From Bugula neritina (taxonomy: Eukaryota > Animalia > Bryozoa), in NCBI GenBank assembly GCA_964035545.1, contig OZ037766.1, positions 20,820,767-20,884,766 on the forward strand: a stretch of DNA of 64,000 nt. The letters are read 5' to 3'. This document shows positions 7,301 to 60,602 of this stretch, in pieces. A program made the position numbers and the translations under genes. The number at the start of each line of letters is the position of its first letter. Position 1 is the first letter of the stretch. The notes below the pieces were generated by a model. That model was not told the DNA's origin. It saw only the letters and a program-made list of their open reading frames with translations, and ran no database searches.

Positions 7301-10300
7301 ATTCTTAAAAAAACTTTTGACTTTTCGACATTGTTTTTGGCCGTCATTTGCTGTTTGCCATACTGCTGCCACTACCACAGCAGCTTGTTGGTGTCTCCAA
7401 CAGTAAACTGTAAAAATCACAGTATTTTTTAATTATATTTTGTACATAACTTGTAACTGTAATGGTTGTGATAACAAGTTTGCTTACCTCACTTGTATCT
7501 TCACCTGGCTTTTCTTTAGAACCACTGAAAGAGATACGAAGATGGATAAGAGTGATACATTTCTTAGCTCTTGTTTATAATTTGTGTGATGCAAACAAGG
7601 TAATTTTTATTTCCTACCTCTACCTTGACTTCCAGATGAAGTTCCACATAATCTCCACGACATGTTTACGGAAGCTTCAATGTTCTGTAGTTTTTGGTAA
7701 CTGTAACAAAATTCGAGCAATGCCTGATATTGGTTATGTAGTTATAGGATTATTTATTTAATCTGATTCAATACTGGATGAGACTGGGTATTTTTGCTTA
7801 GAAAAATTAACATCACGTTACATAATTTTCAAGTTTGTTTGAAGCTGCAGATAATTTAATAAAACAAGAATAAAAATGAATGAAATTAAACATCAAAAGT
7901 TTAACTAAATATTAATTGCTAAAAATATAATCACACCTCTTTTTTCAGCAGCATTTGTGAAGTTCAAAGCATAGTAACTTTCCTCGGCCAATGTAGGCTG
8001 AACAGCTTTTATGTCTCCATGCTCAATACAAATGTTATGAAGACAGCAGCAGACAGCTATTATTTTATTTGCCAATCCTATGTTAGTTTTCAGATTAGAA
8101 AGTCTAAGCCAACGACTTTTTAGGTCTCCAAAACTTCTTTATTTCACCATTCTTGCCAAAGAATGTGTTTTGTTGTAGTATTTTTTAACCGGTAAGCCCT
8201 CTGGATTTATGTACAGCACCATCATGCTCTCATTCAGCCCGTATGTAGAATCGCTTATGGCAAGAAACTGCCTTGAAGCTAGCCTGGATCTATGAAAAAT
8301 ATGGCTGTCATGGCATCTTGCCAACTGCCCAACATTCATATATACAAATTTTTTGTTGCGATTACATAATACTGTCAGATTTATTCTAGTATTACATCTT
8401 CTAGTAAAGAAGTCTATTATTTCTCTTTGAGGTATAAGCACTTCAATCATGGTTCCATCTATGGCTCCCACAACATTTGGGAACTTGCATTTGTAAAAGA
8501 TCTGGGTACTTTTTTTAATTCATTTACACCTTCTAGCCTTTTTATGATGTTAGAAAGATTCTTCAGAACTACACCAACTAGAACTTCTAGACTACTGTAA
8601 GCAGTGTTCATTGAAAGGCCAGTGATGTCATCCTATAAATATTGGAGTCCGAGTGTTATTATTATTTGAATTATTGTATTTGAATAAATATTCTAACTTG
8701 TGAGCTATAAGATGTTTAATGTAATAGAATTACCTAAAGCTACTGTCACTGCCTAAGTACCATAGAGCTACAAGGCACTTTTGCTGGCTAGTTAGACCAT
8801 GGCTGTACGGAGCAAGCCTGAATTCGTTCATCATTTCCACATGGTCAAGTGCATCTGCAAAGTTCACCACATTTCAGCATCAACATCTATGCACATCATA
8901 TTTGTTGTTATGCAACTTACATTTAGTGATTACACAATGCTGTTTTGATTATTGTATAGTGTTATTATTGCTAGCATGATTAATATTATCAAGTGAAATA
9001 GTGCGACTGACTGAAATATGAAACACACTAACCTCTTTCCATTCTAAAATGACTGAAGAACTTTTTGTTGTCCATAGCTGTTATAACTTATAAAATCAAA
9101 ATATTGCCTGCTCTTGAGCAGGTGTCTTGGGATAGTTGTCATGTGTTCATCATCATCAGATGAAGAGCTACTACTGCTGCTTTCAAGAGATTCCAATACC
9201 AGTGGAAGTAATTGCTTCAGCTGGTCTGTTGCTTCTTCAGAGTTTAAGCTTGAAAAATGTTGGGACATTTGAATATAGACTTGCTTTCTCTTTATTTCTG
9301 AACACGGACACCGTAGTGCTCATATTACTAGTAGTCTTTGGCCAACACCTATTACAGTATACATTTATTTATTTCATATCTAAAATTTTTTTATGCTATA
9401 TGTAATACGATAACTGGAAAAAATGTCTTTAAAACATTTAATTTGAAAGAAAAAACTGATAACATGAACATGGGTCAATATACTTACGTTGCTTCTTCTC
9501 CATTATCTTAAAAAGTTGAAAGTAACTTAGAAATTTGTGGTATTGCTTCATTAAAAATCAACTTATAAACTAATATAACATATACATAATGAGAATAGTT
9601 GATAATATTCGTGGTTAAATTTATACTATGGTAAGTTATTGCTACTTACAGTTGCTTGAGGCCTCCATAGTTTTGAGTTAGATGAATACGATAGTGACTA
9701 ATTGATGCCTTGCTCGGAGAAAGATGCTGGCGTATTCGTTTGCAGCAGGCGTTGCTAGTGTACACAGAGAAATGCTAAAACATTATTTATTGCGTCGCTA
9801 ATGTAGTTAAAAAATCTTAGTAGATGCTATTGGTTACTAAGGGTAATATTTTAATCGGCGCATTCGGTAACCACGAGTACCCTGGGTACGCGTAGGGGTA
9901 ACTACCTATTGTATCGCTTACACTCGTTTACAAAAATGACGCAATGTCAGAGTAAAATTACTGTAATTGCTTGAATAATTTCGCCCATGCGTGGTGGTTA
10001 CCGAATGGTCATCGAGTAGGGCCTACAGTTACCCCTACGCAAATCCGAAAGCGCCCTTAAATTCTGATTGGCTACTATTCGTTTCTCAAAACTTATAGTT
10101 GTTGATGTGTACGGCAACCATCGTAACTACATAATTACTGTTTCATTCCATTTTAGTAGCGCCTACAGTCAGCCCTACAAGTAGGGAACCCAAAAGCACT
10201 CCGACTGATTATTGATTGCATGTAACAGGTTGACACAAAAAGCTGAAGTGAGTAATACACATACTATATACACATACTATATAATGTACATACCAAAGCA

Positions 10301-29900: not shown

Positions 29901-32900
29901 ACACACGTTTCATATAAACAATAGACCATGTAAAACTCAGCCAATCAGCGAAGTGTACCAGGTCAATGTCTTACCATTGTAACTGATATAAAATTCTGCA
30001 AGTTCAATTGCAAAATGCATGCTTCTAAAAGCTAGTTGTGCAACTTTTTTTTCATGCATTATTTAATTTAAAATCTTAAATTGATGACTCTTGAAATGAT
30101 TTTTTAAAATGTCTAAATTAAGTGTTTATAAAATGCAATTAAAAATTGCATGTCTAGAAAAATGACCTGGTACACTTTTGCAACTTAAGGCCAATTATTA
30201 CATAACTGCCAGCTTAGTAGTTATTTGTTGTTGCAGCTTGAATGGGTTATTGTTTAGCATTGGAAGCTTGCAGTAAACATCTGTGAATTTGGTACATGAC
30301 TTTGATTGGCTGGTTTTTGAATGGCCCTTTAGTATATGCATCTGGATGGCTGGGTAGTGTAGACTCCGCCTACATCTAGCTAATGTACAGTAGCCAATCC
30401 ACAGTAGTATTACAAAATTTCTGTTTAACAAATGAAATATTCTGGTCATTTGTTTTGTACTTTACAATAGTAAATATTCTATTCAACTAGAATTTTATTG
30501 TATGTAAGCCATGGGAACTACTAAGAGGTTAAATCAACCACCCATGCTAGTAATATTGTAGCTCACAGTAATAGCAAGTCCACACCATATAAATATACAC
30601 ATAAGCTATTATGTGCACCTTATGAATGCTGAAATGACCCCATTTCTTACCTTCAATTTGAAAAAAATTGTATTACATATTCTGCCACTTCTGCACCAGG
30701 AACTTGTTTTCCTTTTAAATTTTGAAAATAGTAGTCAGTTTCTGCAGCAGTCAACTGCATCCACAATAAACAACGTAAGCTTTCAAATAAACTATAAATA
30801 TATGAAATATTAGTGTGGAAACAATGTAATTTATTCATTGCTATGATGAAAAATTACAAGAATATTATATAAAAGCTAGATATAGATTTCTAGTAAAATG
30901 GCACAGGTAAAAATAACACATTTTTACTTCAAATTCTAAATTTCATCAGTCATCAATAGTGGCTGTAGATTACAGAGAGCACAGCAAACTATCATAATCT
31001 TGTCTAATAGAGGTGCCAACACCAAGTTCACACCTCCAGGACCATTTAAAATATTGAACTCCTTTATTCTTTTGATTGCTCTTTCGACATGGATTCGAAG
31101 GTTAGCAATCAACTTTGTTTGCAGTAACTGCATTTTAGTCATTTGCAAATGGCCTCTTTTCCCAGGTGGTATGGCCAACTTGGCTCCAGCGCCTATAAGT
31201 TCTTTTTCAATAAGAAAGCCTCTATCTGCCATAACCACATCACCTGGGTTTATGAAGTCTAAGAACCCAGAGTCATTCACTACACACTTGTCTGAGGCTC
31301 TACCCCCCATTCCATGCGAAATAAAGCAGATAGTGCCCCTGGGTGTAATTTCAACCAAATAATTGATGGTGTTGGTCTTTTTATACTCACTCCATGTTAA
31401 AGATTGAGCCAGCTTTGATTGAGGCTTGCAAATGAATATTTCTGTGCAGTCTATAATGCACCCAATGTTAGCATATTGGCTTTGAAAGCTCAGGGGGATG
31501 TTCAGCTTCTCTCTTGTTGGAAAAACTATTAAATTGTTTAGTTCTCTTGCTAAAATATCTAATGTGTCTTTGAAGGTTTTGCCTGCTAGCAATCTAGAGA
31601 TATAAAAAAGGCCAGCAAGCATTTGAAACTGTAAACCTTGACGCAGCTTCATCAAAGCCAATAAAAGTTTATCTTGTCCTGTTAACTTTTTTCTGAGTGA
31701 GAACTTTCATCTTCGGACATATAAATCTAAATATAGTAAACAAAGAATGAAAATTAAATTATGATTCAAATTATAATGTATGTGCTAAATAAATTTTGTG
31801 CTTAGTTTGTATTCATTCAGCAGTTTTTACCCTCTGGTAAGTAGCTTCAGTTATATTTTGCAAGAACTATGAAGTTCAAGAACTGATAGTTGAAGGCTTG
31901 ACCCAATATATCACCATCCAAACAGAATGTAATGTGTGTCAACATGTGTTACGTAATACTGTAACAGTACATAATAAGCTAGCTGTCTGAGTACACGCTT
32001 TGAATGGAGTCACGAGTTTAAACAAATACTGTTGACAAACAATTATTACTTCATTTTATAATTATACTATAACTAATTCAAACCCATATTATTTCTAGAA
32101 TAGCATTTAATAATGTTTGTGACTAAGTGAAACTAGTAACAAGTGTAAACCATTTTAGTTTTAAACACTGAGTTAGTTTCAGCTAAAATTTAGATTAGGA
32201 GGCCACTTTTGATAAGCTTTAAAATAACCAAGGAAAATTTAAGTCAAAACAATTTACTTTTCTTGGAGAAAGTGAGTCAATTTGTCCACAAATAAAAGAT
32301 TGCTGCTTGCTTAATAAAAACCCTAAACTAAATAAGTCAAAACATACAGATGACCACTGTGGTATTTATAAATATCTTACATAAAACAACATCTTTAATA
32401 AAAAATGTATGAATGATGCACTCACACTGCAACAAATTTAATTAAAATGACAGTTTTACTACACATCAAATTTAATCAATGTACAAATTTTAGCATAGTG
32501 AGACTTGCATTGTTTATTTGTAATAAACCATAGTCTATCTTTGCAATAAGAAAATCATAATTTTTACCTTGCTAAAAAATAGTATAGAGAACGTGTAGGT
32601 ATTCCAGTATAGAATTTAGTTCGCTCATCTGTAGTGGTGAAAGTTTTAAAAACTTTTACTTTTTCAATAGTTGCTTTTTGTTTAAACGTGGAACTTTTTG
32701 AGCCTTTTCCTCCAACTTTTGATTTTCGTCTATCAATAGAATGTGCAGATCTTTTTTTCTGAGTAGTTGATGATTCTGGTAACTCAGTTACTTCTGATGA
32801 AGTCTGACTATGAGGATGGCTGTCAGATGAGTTCTGTTGCTCTATATCAGCTGACTCTGTTGAAGACGTTTTCTGTTCGCTTCCTTCACATGTTTCATTA

Positions 32901-51237: not shown

Positions 51238-54200
51238 ATGGCGTCTGTAGCAGCCTGGTTACCAATAGCTCGAGCATCTGCTATAGGATGGGTGCCCATA
51301 GCTCAAAATCCAATGCCAACGTCACCCAACACTGTCAAAAGTCACAGATCCGATGAGAGACTAAAAATTAACGTGAGTGGTAGGGTGTTTGAAGTGTGGC
51401 GAAATACTTTGGAGAAATATCCAGACACATTACTCGGGTCCAATGAAAAAGAATTCTTTCTAGATGGTGAATCAGGTGAATACTTTTTTGATAGAGATCC
51501 CGATGTCTTCAAAAATGTTCTAAATTTCTATCGCACTGGTAAGCTGCACTACCCTAAGAATGAATGCGTATCGTCTTACGACGAGGAGCTAGCGTTCTTT
51601 GGCATCATGCCTGATGTTATTGGAGACTGCTGTTATGAAGAATATCGTGACAGGAAGAGAGAAACACAAGAACGGCTGATTGACGACAAGGATCCAGATA
51701 ATGTAGAAGCCATATCAGAAATGACCTTGAGAGAAAAGATGTGGAAATCATTCGAGGATCCCCAGTCTAGTACAATAGCTCTTGTATTCTATTATGTAAC
51801 TGGGTTCTTTATAGCCGTGTCTGTACTCACTAACGTCACCGAGACCATCCCGTGTGGAGAAATACCAGGTACAGATGTGAACATGCCCTGTGGAGACAGA
51901 TATGAAGATGGCTTCTTTGTTGTAGACACAGCCTGTGTAATGATTTTTACCGTAGAATATCTTCTTAGACTGTATGCAGCACCAAATAGATGCAACTTTA
52001 TGCGAAGCATCATGAGTATTATCGACGTTGTAGCTATATTACCGTATTATATTGGACTCGCTATAACAGAAAATGATGATGTCAGCGGTGCATTCGTTAC
52101 TCTCCGGGTCTTCAGAGTTTTTCGTATTTTCAAATTTAGCAGACACTCCCAAGGGTTGCGAATCTTGGGCTATACCTTACAAAGTTGTGCCAGCGAACTG
52201 GGATTCCTTCTCTTCTCCATCAGCATGGCCATCATCATATTCTCTACAATCATGTTTTATGCTGAGAAAAACCAAGAAAATACAAAGTTTGTGAGCATAC
52301 CAGCTGCATTCTGGTATACCATAGTCACTATGACCACACTGGGGTAAGTATTAAACATTGCTAGCTATATTCATACTATTCCAATGCAACCATATAATCA
52401 CTATTTACTACTTTAATGATATATTATTGTTGTAATTATTTACTGTATTTGAAGCAATTGATTAATGATTGCAATTCAGCATGTTGAATCAACTCAAATT
52501 GAGTATCTTCTATTGAAAGAAGGAATTTCAATGGGATGTGTTGAAAACAGATAATGGACCATTTAGGCATATAGAAAGTTCCGATATGAATATTAGCCCC
52601 ATAAGGTTTACTTGCTGAAATCTACTCTATATTGTACCATATTCCTCTCACTATGCAAAGAAAGTCCAGTATTAAATGAGATAATTATGCGCGTCTAAGA
52701 GTATAATATGTTAAGTATAATAATAAGATATTATGCAAATACAAACAGATTTGTAGAGTATGTAGCAGCAGTTAAACCAGCGTCTAGCTTTCTCTGACAT
52801 TTCCTAGGGCTTCATTATAACCTAGCTATCTTTGCATTGCTGGTTATTGCCCTCACTACAGCTTGCTCAGATAAATTACTGCTTATTTAATAACGCATAA
52901 AAACTTGCCTTATAGTGTATGACTAATTTACTTTCAGTTGCAAGAAGCACCATCTTTATTACTTGCTGTCACTTTGAGCAGTATTTATATTCATTTGGAT
53001 GCTTAAATCTTATAGCAAATCGATGTAAAGATTCATGGATGAAAAACTAGTTAAGTATAGTTATGGTGATTTTGGCTCGAAATAAGTGCTTCGAGCTATG
53101 CATTAGCAGATGCAATTTTCTGCAGGACTGTTATACTGATAGCCTAATGACTTATCAGTGCGTTCAGCACACTTCACTCAGTAAACCTTCTGCCGAACAA
53201 TAGCTTTTGATACATGTATCAATATTTGTGAACTGACCTGCGTGAAAATCAAGTAGCTATTAGCCACTGCAATGTACATTCAACTGTTAAACAATAGAAG
53301 AAACTGATGTAACTGTCTACGAAGGCAACGACCATTGCAATAGAGACAGCTGAAATTTACAATCCAAACTTGTGTTGCATGCAAGTAGTTACTTTAATTT
53401 TAGAACAATATATGTACTTGTTTGTGACTGATGAAAAAGGTATTCAACAGAATCTGTTTTAATCATAAGCGAAGTGCTACAATGTTTTGTATAAAATGGG
53501 CCCTTAAATTATGTAATAGATTATTATAATACACCGTAAGCTAGTTAATTATTAGAATTCTTAGGTGTTTAGTAATCAGGCAAATCGGATAAAAAATTAT
53601 CATTAAGGGGATTAAGAAAATTTGGATAACTTTTAATAAACCCGTGCTAGCTATTTTAAACTAATTAATTTGATTACTTAAGGTTGTATTACTGTATTAC
53701 GATATTACTTTCTCTCCTGGGTGGGATAACCTGTGGTGAAGAATCCGCTTGTGTTTAGTAAATATAAGCGCACACCTGGATGCAGGCTATTTATAACTCT
53801 ACACCTACACTGGTGATGACTCTAATTCCAAGACAGTTTACTATATAGCATATCGAAGGCAGAGTCTTGCATGCCTTACTTTCACAAGTTTTCAACTGAT
53901 AACTGTTATTGCATATAATATTTGCATATTATAACTTCTGCAAGCCTATGCTGTACTAAAAGCCTTGGTAATTAAATTGCTAAATGCTACTACAATCTTC
54001 AGCACTGCCTAATATTTGGGCTTATATGCTGTAAGATAGCCTTTACTGATTTTCATGCCTACAGTGGAAAAATAAAGGCAGAGTATACTATGTAGTAGTG
54101 GTGCTAAAATAAGGCAGCTTGACAATATAAGCAGTATAATGAAGTGCAAACTGTTGCAGCTGCGCTCTTAGTCCTGACTATTCTGTTAATCTCGTTAGCT

Positions 54201-57200
54201 GCATGGGACTATATATTAATATTTTCATAAACACAGCTTGACAACTGCAGGAAGAATATAGAATGTTTCTTATCTGGGTCCATAATATTAATTTGTCTCC
54301 AAGTTCTGTACTGGAATGGGAAGAAAATTCCAAATTCATATTAATCTAAAGGCTATGTAAAATTCCTAACGTGTCTAAGCTCTGCTAGATCATCAATTAG
54401 AAAATTAACCTGTTGCGTCAGCATAATTATCATTGAGTGTTAAGGCAGCATGATGCACATTAGTTAGTCTTACTTAGATAGTTATAAATAGATTTTCACT
54501 AAGCTATCAGTTTATTAACAACAGTGCCTCAGGGCATACAGCTCAGGCTTTCACTAATCGTTTACTTTAAAATGCAGTCAGTCTTACTGATTCAACAAGA
54601 AATTGGTGATTGTACATTGAAGTGGAATTTAAAAAGTACCTCAGGCTTAAAAAGTAATAATATTTACTAAAACTTTGTCCTTGAACTTATTTTAAAGACA
54701 CAACCCTGTATACACCAAGCGGGCTAGTTGTCTTGGAACATAAGCTATACATTGTGAGCAGCTTTATTATTGGAAAGATAATATCAATATTATGTTTAAT
54801 AATTGCTAGACAATGAAGTGTCCCCAGCCAATAGTAGTTGGTTCAATAATGACTTTGAGATATAAAAAAGATTTGATTGATCCCAAAGAAAGCCGTGGAA
54901 AAGATGTATAAGGATTAGTAGCTGACTTAGGTTTGATTAAGGTTCAATCTACCTAGCAGCATTAACAGCGGCCATCCATGCTTTCGTGTTGCATAGCATG
55001 CTATTATAATTGCATTAATATAATTCGCACAGCATTTTATTATTAACCATAATCTATATAATTACAGTAAGTCTGTAGGTTAAAGCATACTAATAGTACT
55101 TTCATTCTGCACAGGAGCTGATAGAAATTGCGTAGTTTTGTATTCCAATCTGGTAATTGGGCACTAGCTGGCCATGAAACTCAAATTTTGGATTTATGCC
55201 CGACTGCCATTTGATAAAGCACGCACCACTTCTTTCGGTCTATAAAACAATTATACACTCTTTTTAAACATCCTAAACAGTACTGTAGAGCAGTTTTAGC
55301 AGCTTTTTGTGACATTTAAAAAGTTAAGAAGAGAGAGTGCAATAAAACTAGCAATGTTATTCAGAATCTGCAAATGTCGTTTTTAAATAAATCGGCTATG
55401 AAATAGAACTTGTATTGTAGTTTCATAAAATTCTTGTAAAACTCTACAAAGTTAGCAACTTGACCCTCAGTATAAGTTATTCTGTAGACCACTCCAAAAA
55501 TGTCTGAAATACCAAAACAGACTCCGCTGCCTGCGGCAGATGAACTTGTTCATCTAACTAACTATTGTAACAAACAGGCTAGATGGCTGATACAAACACA
55601 AGTGATAGGAAAGTGAAAGTGACTACAGCATATTTAGTAACTAACTCATCATATAGCACTGCTTAGAACATAAACTTATTTACAGCTGTATTAGGGTATG
55701 GAAATTATCGTTCTTTAAATTTTCAATTGCTTCAAGATTTACCTGAACATTTAGTGTCTAAAAGTAAGGGTCAATAAGGAATATAAGTGTAATGTACACA
55801 GTACAGTAAGTAGGCTATGGCGAATTATATACAGTGCAGTAAGTATAGTATATATAACAACATAGTAGAGTATGGTATAGTATAATATACAGTACAGTAA
55901 GTATATAAATATGCAAGTCATATAACCTGCATATTACTCTCTCTCTATATTCTACAAAAGAAGCTAATATTATTATACTATTAGGTAGGAACAGAATAAA
56001 TATATCCCAAGATAACTAATCTATACTAATGCTATTACAATGTCACATGACAATTAGGTATGACGTACACTACACTATGTACATAACACTTAGCCTATTA
56101 TTCATTTACTCTACTCATTGTGACCAAATTGTCTTATAGAAGGCAAGTTGGTGTGATTTGTTAGGCTAACTAATTTATTGGGTGATATTATTTCGTTAAA
56201 CTTTCAACAACTATTCAAAACACTTAAATTTCAGCATTTAAGCAGTATTTGTAAAAATTTGAAAAAGCTTGATGAATATTTATATTAAATGATCAGAGTG
56301 CAAACTTATAAATCTTGCATATGCTTTCTTATAAACGAACAGTAAGTCTCCAAGACTAGATGCTATTCTACACACCTACTTTATATATTTATTGGCTTTT
56401 TAGTTTTATTATTGAATGAGTATTCCATAATGTAGCCTCATATGGTGGCTTATTTGTTTTGTTTTATGAGAAAATTAATATGGAAGATAGCTCTAGATTT
56501 GTGTAGCTGAAGGAGACATTACTAAAAGTTGTAAAGTGTTTGCTTATAGTTGTTATACACAACAAACATAATAATGTATGCACGAGAATCAATTTTTTTT
56601 ATCAAGTGGCTCAAGAACATCTTTCATCATGACAACATATACTGACTGCTGGACTACGATAGCGGCAGCAGTATATTATGTGATCAATACTTGTACTCTA
56701 CTAGTTTGTATAATATTGTTTTCATGCTTCTCTGTGATATATTATGTGTAACAAATCTGAGAAAGCTTGACTGAGTTTGCCAAAACTTCAAATTTTAAGT
56801 CATTACTAAAATTTTGCATAATTTTTAATTTATGACTATGAAACTAATAGCTGTTGAAAGCTGGGATTTCACATATAAAAGTCTCGCAGTTAATTTCTAT
56901 CTTCATTTCCCTGGAGACAAACTGAGTAGCATTGTAGAGCAGGATTTAGTTCATTCAACTTTTACCTTATTTATTTAATTTAGTTTGCATGCACTGAAGC
57001 ACACTTCAGTTACACATAATAATGCTAATATATCAAGCATCAAAATATAGCAGCTATATATTAGCTCTAAATTATATCACCGGTTCTTGGCACATAGTTA
57101 GTAATATCTCAAATACTTCTATAGTACATATTATGTATACAGCATTTAAACATACATATCTGAGATATTTTAATAAACTTTAGAATCCCATGTGCAAAGG

Positions 57201-60200
57201 TTGTCTCCCCTGAGTGGCTTTACTAAAATAGCAATATCAATATTATATATACTTCAGGCAGAGGCAGCTCAGAAATTTCTATCTGCTGATTTAGTTTTCA
57301 CTATTCTGTAATATATTATGTTAGGTTTTCGTTCCCACTGCTTTCTATCTGTTTGTAATGTGAGCAATGTTACTTTTCAGTTATGGAGACATGGTTCCTA
57401 GTAGCATTATAGGCAAGTTAGTCGGAGGGATATGCTCTCTAAGTGGGGTGCTTGTCATAGCACTTCCTGTTCCTGTTATTGTTTCTAACTTCTCACGAAT
57501 TTATAGCCAGAGTCAGCGAGCAGACAAACGTAAAGCTCAAAAGGTATTGTCAAGTTGATGCATGGAGAAAGTCCCGGTTAATAAACAGCTGCGCATTTCC
57601 TAGAAGTGTCAAATGCCAGTGTTTGGTCAACAGGGGCTTTCTACATCAATATATTTTACTATCTCTTATCCTAAAGTGTATTATGTATTTCAGCTATGGG
57701 GACATGACTCCAAACACTATTATGGGCAAGCTGTTCGGCAGTATTTGCTCATTATGTGGTGTTTTGGTCATTGCACTGCCAGTGCCTGTTATTGTCTCAA
57801 ACTTCAGTAGAATTCTTGGTCAGAATCAGCGGCAAGATAAAATGAAAGCCCAGAAGGTATTTTTAGAGAGTGGGGTTTGAAGTTTTTACACTCTCACAAA
57901 ACGCTTTTGTGGCTGGCACTACAACTCACAGAACTGCCTAATGTTTTGTTTATTTTCTTTTTCATAAACTTACTTTAACAGCTATTTTAACCAAAGTGTG
58001 TTCATTTCTGCACATAATATAAAACTAAAACTTGTTTGCTTCTGCCCATTTTGTACCCTCAACATATCCTAAACTCTAATGCGACTTTTACCTGGTAACA
58101 TAAAGTATGCTTTTTTTCCAGCTGCACAGTTTTCTTTTGTTTTTAAAATTACCAAATCTGTTATTAAAGAAGTTTTTAAATGTCTATACAAAGTTTTAAA
58201 ATTATTTGAATGAAATATGATTGTAAAATCCATAAGTACTTTTTGAAATTCTTATTTCATGTCTCGAAATCACTCTTTGCCTTCAAACCATAACTCGCCA
58301 TCAAATTAATTGGGTCAGCTTGATATAAAATTCTAAGCTGTCTACTTAAAAAGTCAATGTAAATATTTCAGAAAGCAAGACAGCATAGAATCAAGATGGC
58401 CAAACAGGCGAGTAACCAAGCCTATGTCAGGGCCAAGCAGGAAATTTTGGAACAAGAACTTAAACATCAAAATGGAGAATCAGAGCTGGATACTTCTGAG
58501 AAAGATGTATTTGAGGCTCAACACCATCATCTATTAAATTGTCTTGAAAAAACCACGGTAGGTTGAAGAATTGTAATGTATGTGCGCTTCTACAATTAGA
58601 TAAGATAACTCCTAAATTACATTGTTCAAGTAGCATAAAAGTTAGTATTTGAATTTTCAAATTAGGTTCATCTGTTGAGTGAAAAAGCTGCTGTAAAAAT
58701 GAGTTCCATAGAGTCTATAATACTTTATAATATTTATATAAGTAATATAATACATATTTTCCATATTCAACGGATAATGCTATAAGGGTAATTTTATTTA
58801 ATTTAGTACACACCGAAAATTTCCAGTTTTTAGCTATTTTTCACAATTTAGCTGCTAATGAACATGGGTCTTTGCCCAAAACTAGTAAAATATTAATAAA
58901 TACACCTAACTAATCAAGGTTTTCTTAATTTTGCTTGATTGCCTATGTCTTTTCCTATTTATTTAGCTAATTTGGATTTTGGAACGTTATGAAAAAACCG
59001 AAATCAAAAGTAGCTAAATAATTAAGAAAAACAGGGGATTAAGGCAAGCAAAATTAAAAAGAACTTTAATTATTTAGGTGTATTTATTGATATTTTACTA
59101 GTTTTGGGCAAAAACCCATGTTCATTAGCAGTTAGATTGTGAAAAATAGCTAAAAACTGGAAATTTCCAATGTATACTAAATTAAGTAAAATGACCGATA
59201 ATTATGAGAGCAACACAATTGCATCACATGAGGGGGGAGTATAGTGACACTTACATGGTTGTTTAACTCACAGATTCTTTAATATGTAAAATATTTGAAT
59301 TGTTTACTAAACCTAAATGCCACAACCAAGTTTCATAGCCACACCCAATGACACTTAGTCCCACACCGATTTGATAAACTTTTGGTATGCCTTGACGAAT
59401 TAACTTGATGGCCAAATAAATTTATCTGACTAAAATAAGCTACTACTCAATCTATTATTTTTGCCACTTTGTATTTGATTTCACTAAGAGACTATGTATG
59501 CTTTAGTTAAACAATTATCTTACAACTGGTCTAAAAGCATATAGTTTAAGGAAAATTACTCCACTTCTATATTATATAACAATATAGGATATAATACATT
59601 ATTTTTCTTACAATAACTATCACTATATAAAATATTACATTATATGGTTACAATTTATTATAATACTTGTACTGCTATATTTAACTTATTGAATTAAATA
59701 TAATTAAAGTATTTATATGATTGTTATATTATATTTGTAAGTATGATATTATTTTAAAAATGAAAAAATAATAATGTATTGAACTAGAATAAAAATTATG
59801 TATATAATAATGTATTAATAATAGAAAATAGTAATTTTCTCTTGAAATACGTAAAGCTACAAGATGTCTTGAAGTACATATTGCTCGAGTACAATGTCAG
59901 CTAAGAATGCATTATAAACAAACTTTGTTATAACACAAACTGTCGAAAATATAAACAAATTGGAAATTTATAAAATGTATTGTTATTTATTACCTTTGAA
60001 TAACACTGCTTGTTAGCAAATTCTACAAAAAATAATCTTTTACGCAGAATGTGGATTTTACCGACGAAAAACCACCTCTTCTTGAAGATGAATTCCACAA
60101 AGTATCTCATACACCACCATTAGTTCACTTCTCTAACACCTCGCTTGACTCAAAGAGTTGCTGTGGAAAACGACGGAAAAAACCTATCGAAGTAAGTTAC

Positions 60201-60602
60201 CATGCACATACAAATTGCATGGTTATTATCAGTAATCAAAATTGGCTCACTATCAGACTGGGTTACCTTCTGTAAAATAAATATTCATCCCAGGTACATT
60301 AAAATTTAAAACTAAAACTCCTAAACACAATGGTATTTGAAAACTACTAATTACTTCAATTTTTTTGTATTTACTTGGCACAGTGGCTATCAGAAGGTTT
60401 AGCTGCGATATTTTTGCAGATGACTGGCACCAATGACGTCGGTGGAGAATTATCTGATGTTAAAATAAATCTTGATGCACATTTGGATGATTCAACCGAT
60501 AATGGCCACCATTACCCTCAAATACATGTCAATAACAATCGCCGGTTTGGTCATTCTAGCAAAAACACTGATAACACAGAATTGCACATGTCAATGCTGT
60601 GA
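51238..60602 (+). CDS. Shal: Voltage-gated K+ channel Kv4/Shal (~593 aa)
   Basis: Exon 51238-52343: [20 protein letters not shown] (KChIP-binding N-terminus), T1, S1-S5, S4 [21 protein letters not shown]. Then pore/S6 exon 57381-57543 or 57694-57856; 58372-58557 ([16 protein letters not shown]); 60048-60191; 60420-60602. Confidence 0.97.
57381..57543 (+). CDS. Shal: Kv4 pore/S6 exon variant A (canonical-like)
   Basis: ttttcag|T TAT GGA GAC...AAG|gtatt; 163 nt; [54 protein letters not shown]. Confidence 0.93.
57694..57856 (+). CDS. Shal: Kv4 pore/S6 exon variant B (divergent)
   Basis: atttcag|C TAT GGG GAC...AAG|gtatt; 163 nt; [54 protein letters not shown]. Confidence 0.9.
58781..59200. mobile_element. 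Palindromic (foldback) MITE, ~420 bp
   Basis: Arms such as ttccagtttttagctatttttcacaat and attgtgaaaaatagctaaaaactggaa are reverse complements over ~190 bp. Confidence 0.85.

What the first reader, a model, noticed from the sequence alone, without database searches (positions are those of the whole stretch)
57381..57856. Kv4/Shal channel with tandem, apparently mutually exclusive swappable pore/S6 exons
Seen: two intact 163-nt exons, 150 nt apart, with identical phases (2 to 0) and good splice sites. Both encode YGD-outer pore-S6-PVP-post-S6. Third codon positions differ widely while the [17 protein letters not shown] core is unchanged, which suggests an old duplication under purifying selection. 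Because 163 is not a multiple of 3, including both exons or neither frameshifts the protein, so only one-or-the-other gives a channel. Exon A is canonical Kv4 (GYGDMVP, CSLSG, RIY, RADKR). Exon B has GYGDMTP, CSLCG, RIL, RQDKM. Known: the residue after GYGDM is Shaker 449, which controls C-type inactivation and external TEA block, and the S6 tail couples to the S4-S5 linker in gating and Kv4 closed-state inactivation. Inference: one gene makes two A-type channels with different pore and gating properties, and possibly mixed tetramers. I know of no description of such pore exons in Kv4, but could not search.
Basis: partly seen in the sequence, partly recalled or inferred. Interest (0 to 1): 0.9.

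Follow-up and report, generated by a model that had tools for sequence, protein, structure and literature searches.

The report
Swappable pore exons in bryozoan Kv4
A moss animal's gene for an A-type potassium channel carries two old copies of the exon for the pore mouth and gate and puts one or the other into each messenger RNA, so one gene makes a standard channel and a second version altered at normally fixed gate positions; the trick is known from other ion channels, but I found no paper describing it for this family.

Summary
Confirmed. The window is Bugula neritina chromosome 2 (assembly size identical to tzBugNeri2.1). Its Kv4/Shal gene has two 163-nt pore/S6 exons. RNA contigs show E1-A-E4 in three runs and E1-B-E4 in one, never A+B, so both exons are used, B probably as the minor form. 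B is under purifying selection (dN/dS about 0.04-0.09). The pair recurs in this genome's second Kv4 gene (also noted by the scan, s1-478700), in Watersipora (RefSeq X1/X2) and in four unnamed, probably bryozoan loci. All B exons form one clade (100/95), so the duplication predates the paralog split. Lingula has a milder pair of uncertain homology; Lottia and Lineus have one exon. The conserved B signature is not the Shaker-449 residue, which varies both ways, but changes at Kv4.2 S393, Y413, A419 and R422, near-invariant in 160 other Kv4 sequences. That points to closed-state inactivation and KChIP coupling rather than C-type inactivation or TEA block. A GCATG (Rbfox-type) motif lies between the exons in 7 of 8 loci. 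A functional difference is inferred, not shown. This is a new variant of a known kind (Shaker A/B, Cav1.2 8/8a); automated annotations already hold both isoforms in two species.

The parts
51238..52343 (+). Kv4 coding exon E1: Shal N-terminus, T1 domain, S1-S5, pore helix, ending in the TTLG of the filter (phase 2)
   Evidence: PF11601, PF02214, PF00520; its 3' end is the loose 5' end of both A and B contigs
57381..57543 (+). Exon A, canonical pore/S6 exon (Kv4.2 Y373-K426 equivalent)
   Evidence: spliced to E4 in X1, X9, X3 and to E1 in X9, X3
57544..57693 (+). 150-nt intron between A and B
   Evidence: no contig joins A to B and none lies in it
57559..57564 (+). TGCATG, candidate Rbfox-type splicing element downstream of A and upstream of B
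   Evidence: GCATG in the inter-exon intron in 7 of 8 loci, 11 seen against about 1.2 expected; binding not tested
57694..57856 (+). Exon B, divergent pore/S6 exon with F14, C21, L41, Q47, M50
   Evidence: one oligo-dT RNA contig runs E1 end - B - E4 (X11); orthologs
58372..58557 (+). Common exon E4 (post-S6 helix, start of DUF3399)
60048..60191 (+). Common exon E5
   Evidence: its first bases are the loose end behind E4 in X1, X9, X11; frame
60384..60602 (+). Probable last coding exon with stop codon; acceptor position not confirmed
   Evidence: 60414-60599 matches the end of Bugula KAF6019327.1

Best explanation
A tandem duplication of the Kv4 pore/S6 exon, older than the split of the two bryozoan Kv4 genes, is spliced mutually exclusively. 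SHOWN: both exons are spliced between E1 and E4; no A+B join was seen; both-or-neither products carry premature stops; B is conserved under purifying selection. INFERRED (about 0.65): A gives an ordinary A-type channel and is the major form; B gives a conducting channel with the same filter and gate core but shifted inactivation and recovery, because it changes upper S6 (Kv4.2 S393, Kv4.3 S390) and the cytoplasmic S6 helix (Y413, H414, A419, R422) that packs on the T1-S1 linker and leads to KChIP. INFERRED (about 0.55): an Rbfox-family protein bound to GCAUG between the exons favours A and represses B in the cells that express it (typically neurons and muscle), B appears where it is low, and nonsense-mediated decay removes both/neither products.
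For: Junction contigs. Pair in the paralog, Watersipora and loci L022, L025-L031. B-B dN/dS 0.044-0.090; window/Watersipora B pN 0.04, pS 0.65. B clade 100/95 and A+B as sisters rejected, p-AU 0.0056; 7 columns group exons by type against 1 by gene. Y41 160/160, S21 159/160, R50 158/160, A47 154/160 among other Kv4 sequences. Kv4.2 S6 bends at A419 without KChIP1 (PMC8566240); S390N shifts Kv4.3 inactivation (PMC4531139). GCATG enrichment, P about 9e-8, absent in the flanks, and found again in Watersipora, fetched after the motif was noticed.
Against: B was seen in one contig of depth 3.7 in one of four runs. Contigs drop rare forms, so absence of A+B is weak. Kv4.2 Y413A has only a mild effect (inactivation midpoint -62.6 against -66.9 mV; PMC2638201), and all S6 residues with large effects in that scan are identical in A and B of this gene. 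The paralog's 77-nt intron has no GCATG. An Rbfox gene was not confirmed in this genome (uninformative). The 160 comparison sequences include many isoforms and close relatives and were found by similarity.
Confidence: 0.7

Rival explanations
1. Both isoforms are real, but B is a modifier subunit: poorly conducting or badly trafficked alone, acting in A/B or cross-paralog heterotetramers, like regulatory Kv subunits with altered S6.
For: B changes otherwise invariant S6 positions; in L022 the second exon has lost the PVP motif and the whole S6 tail; B appears rare; S390 substitution impairs Kv4.3 trafficking (PMC4531139).
Against: In the window, the paralog, Watersipora and L025-L031, B keeps GYGD, the glycine hinge and the full PVPVIVSNF gate.
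Confidence: 0.15
2. The two isoforms are functionally near-equivalent; B persists because it is spliced in some cells and must stay functional, not because it gates differently.
For: Y413A is mild; Lingula's two exons differ at only 7 residues, mostly at tolerant positions.
Against: B-specific residues are shared by both paralogs and all B exons while synonymous sites are near saturation; relaxed equivalence would not fix the same departures.
Confidence: 0.12
3. B is a pseudoexon, leaky splice product or assembly duplication.
For: Single low-depth contig from a biofilm metatranscriptome; an identical-copy artefact of this exon exists in a fish gene model, P0415.
Against: A and B are only 71% identical; B is intact with good splice sites in at least six other genes, has dN/dS below 0.1 and is a RefSeq isoform in Watersipora.
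Confidence: 0.03

Closest known systems
Drosophila Shaker (Kv1) ShA/ShB splice variants
   Same: One Kv gene makes variants that differ in S6; residue 463 changes C-type inactivation about 100-fold (PMC2223370). From my own knowledge, the variants come from duplicated pore/S6-containing 3' exons.
   Different: Different subfamily. From my own knowledge the Shaker switch also replaces the C-terminus; here it is an internal 163-nt cassette with a shared C-terminus. The 463 equivalent is S in both exons of this gene (A in the paralog's B).
Cav1.2 exons 8/8a and other duplicated channel exons
   Same: Mutually exclusive exons encoding alternative S6 segments under splicing-factor control (PMC3060452 abstract).
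   Different: Four-domain calcium channel, one S6 of four, PTB-regulated; in a tetrameric Kv4 the switch can affect all four subunits or give mixtures.
Kv4/Shal channels (KCND1-3, fly Shal, lobster shal)
   Same: Shal N-terminus, T1, six-helix core, DUF3399; exon A is canonical.
   Different: Known Kv4 splicing, from my own knowledge, affects the C-terminus (Kv4.3 L/S, lobster shal). Isoform clusters of molluscs, Lineus, amphioxus and a hemichordate show one pore exon type; Lottia and Lineus loci hold one copy.
RefSeq Shal isoforms X1/X2 of Watersipora subatra (XP_067938089.1, XP_067938090.1) and Lingula anatina (XP_013382119.1, XP_013382127.1)
   Same: Equal-length isoform pairs that differ only inside this exon, from tandem 163-nt copies.
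   Different: Automated models with no description found. Watersipora is the orthologous A/B pair; Lingula's copies lack the B signature and may be an independent duplication.

Membership tests
Kv4/Shal | Shal-type N-terminus, T1 domain, Ion_trans core, DUF3399 | tested here: met
   all above Pfam cut-offs
Kv4/Shal | Closest relatives are Kv4 proteins | tested here: met
   cluster contains Bugula neritina KCND3 KAF6019327.1
Kv4/Shal | A-type current with closed-state inactivation, KChIP modulation | not testable with these tools
   needs expression
Mutually exclusive exons from tandem duplication | Adjacent homologous exons of equal length and phase with intact splice sites | tested here: met
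Mutually exclusive exons from tandem duplication | Each exon spliced alone between the same flanking exons | tested here: met
   E1-A-E4 and E1-B-E4 contigs
Mutually exclusive exons from tandem duplication | Both-included and both-skipped forms absent or unproductive | tested here: inconclusive
   none seen, both frameshift, but contigs cannot show absence
Mutually exclusive exons from tandem duplication | Both exons under purifying selection | tested here: met
   dN/dS 0.03-0.09 where measurable
Rbfox-regulated exons | Conserved (U)GCAUG in the flanking intron | tested here: met
   7 of 8 loci; motif identity from PMC5697891
Rbfox-regulated exons | Rbfox binding and dependence of splicing on it | not testable with these tools
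   family search uninformative
Docking-site/selector (RNA pairing) mutually exclusive exons | Conserved complementary intronic elements | tested here: inconclusive
   no outstanding inverted repeat and no alignable intron conservation

The most novel reading that the evidence does not exclude
The Kv4 pore-exon pair is a single ancient duplication shared by bryozoans and brachiopods but absent from molluscs and nemerteans, kept under a conserved Rbfox switch; in bryozoans copy B became a distinct gate module that retunes closed-state inactivation and KChIP coupling by cell type. It would be both a natural experiment on the Kv4 cytoplasmic S6 helix and a rare genomic character for the disputed Lophophorata grouping.
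Probability: 0.25. Interest if true: 0.7.

Novelty: new variant of a known kind. Interest (0 to 1): 0.5.

Why it matters
Kv4's pore and S6 are nearly invariant across bilaterians, and native A-current diversity is usually credited to KChIP and DPP subunits. A conserved natural isoform pair on an identical background, differing at S393, Y413, A419 and R422, gives a direct test of the cryo-EM proposal that the cytoplasmic S6 helix transmits KChIP modulation. If phoronids and other brachiopods share the pair and annelids lack it, it bears on bryozoan relationships, which remain debated (PMC13326412). Interest is limited because swappable pore exons are a known device, are apparently common in this genome, and no functional difference is shown.

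Tried and rejected
Third exon copy in the window: none. Other multiple hits in the genome (C4, C2:0.49 Mb, C7) lie kilobases apart and each has its own upstream T1/core match, so I read them as separate Kv genes. Shaker-449 V/T as the defining switch: rejected. Steric exclusion as the general mechanism: intron lengths are 46-190 nt in bryozoan loci and 433 in Lingula, so it can apply at most to the shortest. RNA pairing elements: nothing beyond chance in AT-rich DNA. Homology of the Lingula pair: AU tests reject none of three alternatives (p 0.21-0.39), and grouping all gene-1 exons together was not rejected either (p 0.18). Fish model P0415 with two copies: identical in protein, taken as artefact. 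Owenia locus too long to fetch; L034 did not reach the exon; L036 shows one copy but ends 2.4 kb downstream. No phoronid sequence was identified. Ten literature queries (nine topics, one syntax error not counted) found no description of Kv4 pore exons; subscription journals are not covered. No structure prediction was run, as it would not separate the rivals.

Full report
Observation. Exons A (57381-57543) and B (57694-57856) are 163 nt each, bounded by AG and GT, in phase 2 to 0, 150 nt apart. They share 42 of 54 residues; pS is 0.72 and pN 0.16. The gene is a Kv4/Shal channel by Pfam domains and nearest relatives. Including both exons, or neither, gives a premature stop with exon junctions downstream.

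Source. The window lies on chromosome 2. The Bugula protein KAF6019327.1 matches this gene and uses exon A.

Both exons are used. Contigs of four runs from four studies were laid on 57200-58700. A is joined to E4 through GT..AG in X1, X9 and X3, with the end of E1 as loose 5' end in X9 and X3. In X11, an oligo-dT biofilm metatranscriptome, one contig runs from the last 29 nt of E1 through B into E4, with one mismatch in B and the same E1 variant as the other runs, so it comes from the same species or strain. No A-to-B joint appeared. B is in one run of four at low depth, which suggests a minor or restricted isoform; contigs cannot give levels or prove absence. X9 and X3 are RNA only by guess, but their joints are spliced.

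Age and selection. The second Kv4 gene of this genome (chromosome 1, 77% identical) has the same pair with a 77-nt intron. Seven columns group exons by type and one by gene. Pairs also occur in Watersipora subatra, where RefSeq X1 (B) and X2 (A) differ only in this exon, and in unnamed loci L028-L030, L031, L025-L027 and L022. I take these as bryozoan by inference: the first exons of L022 and L025 fall in the 15-row clade with both Bugula genes, one record is named BRYA16-1, and L028-L031 are placed only by exon similarity. All nine B exons form a clade at 100/95, and A and B of the window as sisters are rejected at p 0.0056; a looser by-gene grouping was not rejected. B-to-B dN/dS is 0.044-0.090.

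Outside bryozoans. Lingula anatina has two tandem 163-nt copies, annotated as RefSeq X1 and X2. They differ at 7 residues and lack the B signature; 54 columns cannot decide whether they share an origin with the bryozoan pair. Gap-free loci of Lottia and Lineus have one copy. Isoform sets of bivalves, gastropods, amphioxus and a hemichordate show one exon type. Annelids and phoronids could not be tested.

What differs. Exon position 1 is Kv4.2 Y373, Kv4.3 Y370 and Shaker Y445. The stable B signature is F/M14, C/A21, L41, a changed residue at 47 in most and at 50 in all. Among 160 other Kv4 sequences these positions are V 153, S 159, Y 160, A 154 and R 158 (the set is redundant). Position 21 is Kv4.3 S390, where S390N speeds inactivation and shifts it negative (PMC4531139). 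[quoted passage not shown] Against a large effect, Y413A is mild and the strongly acting gate residues are unchanged (PMC2638201). The best inference is a conducting channel with moderately retuned inactivation, recovery or KChIP response. This step is not shown.

How the choice is probably made. GCATG occurs in the intron between the exons in 7 of 8 loci, 11 times in 1,242 nt against about 1.2 expected (P about 9e-8, 9e-5 after correcting for all 5-mers), against 2 in 1,738 nt of other introns of the same genes; it is absent from the 150 nt after B in all loci. I noticed the motif in the data, then found it again in Watersipora. The loci are related, but their introns do not align. GCAUG is the FOX-1/ASD-1 (Rbfox) motif (PMC5697891). 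By the positional rule known for Rbfox (own knowledge: downstream activates, upstream represses) it would favour A and repress B, which fits A being the major form. The paralog lacks it in that intron and has one just upstream of A. Steric hindrance and RNA pairing found no general support.

Comparison with what is known. It works like Drosophila Shaker A/B, whose S6 difference changes inactivation 100-fold (PMC2223370), and like Cav1.2 exons 8/8a. It is a member of the Kv4 family and of tandem-duplicate mutually exclusive exons. Paper searches found no description for Kv4 or for bryozoan potassium channels, within an open-access library only. The scan has noted the paralog's pair and many other such exon pairs in this genome, so the device is common here.

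Method notes. Joined pieces were only translated locally to check frame.

Verdict. Real, expressed and conserved mutually exclusive pore/S6 exons (about 0.95); functionally distinct isoforms likely (about 0.65); Rbfox control plausible (about 0.55); common origin with Lingula open (about 0.4). New variant of a known kind, interest 0.5.

Noticed in passing
L002:1500-1662 and 1740-1902 (G000:C1, near 7.218 Mb): Second Kv4 gene with the same A/B exon pair; exon plus intron is 240 nt and open, so intron retention would read through both copies in frame. Its RNA use was not tested.
   Followed up: partly
L037 minus strand (G000:C2, about 10.757 Mb): Two tandem exons for the BK (slo) pore helix, filter and S6, with AG/GT ends; matches the scan's note s1-472076.
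   Followed up: partly
L022:12541-12703: In a third Kv4 lineage the second exon is strongly diverged, has lost the PVP motif and S6 tail but keeps length and splice sites, only 46 nt after the first; could encode a non-conducting or regulatory subunit.
   Followed up: partly
P0299, P0300: Kv3-like proteins with two different pore/S6 stretches; merged tandem genes or another exon pair.
   Followed up: no
P0415 (Pimephales promelas): Kv4 model with two identical copies of this exon; probably an assembly or annotation artefact.
   Followed up: partly
P0462 (Owenia) and P0071 (Gigantopelta): Annotated Kv4 exons carry the RQDK motif seen in exon B; the Owenia locus was too long to check for a second exon.
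   Followed up: partly
window 30939-31706 and 8142-8519, minus strand: DDE_Tnp_4 (PIF/Harbinger-type) transposase reading frames.
   Followed up: partly
G000:C4 17.22-17.24 Mb, C2 0.495-0.501 Mb, C7 12.405-12.414 Mb: Small clusters of divergent Kv-like genes with altered PVP motifs.
   Followed up: no
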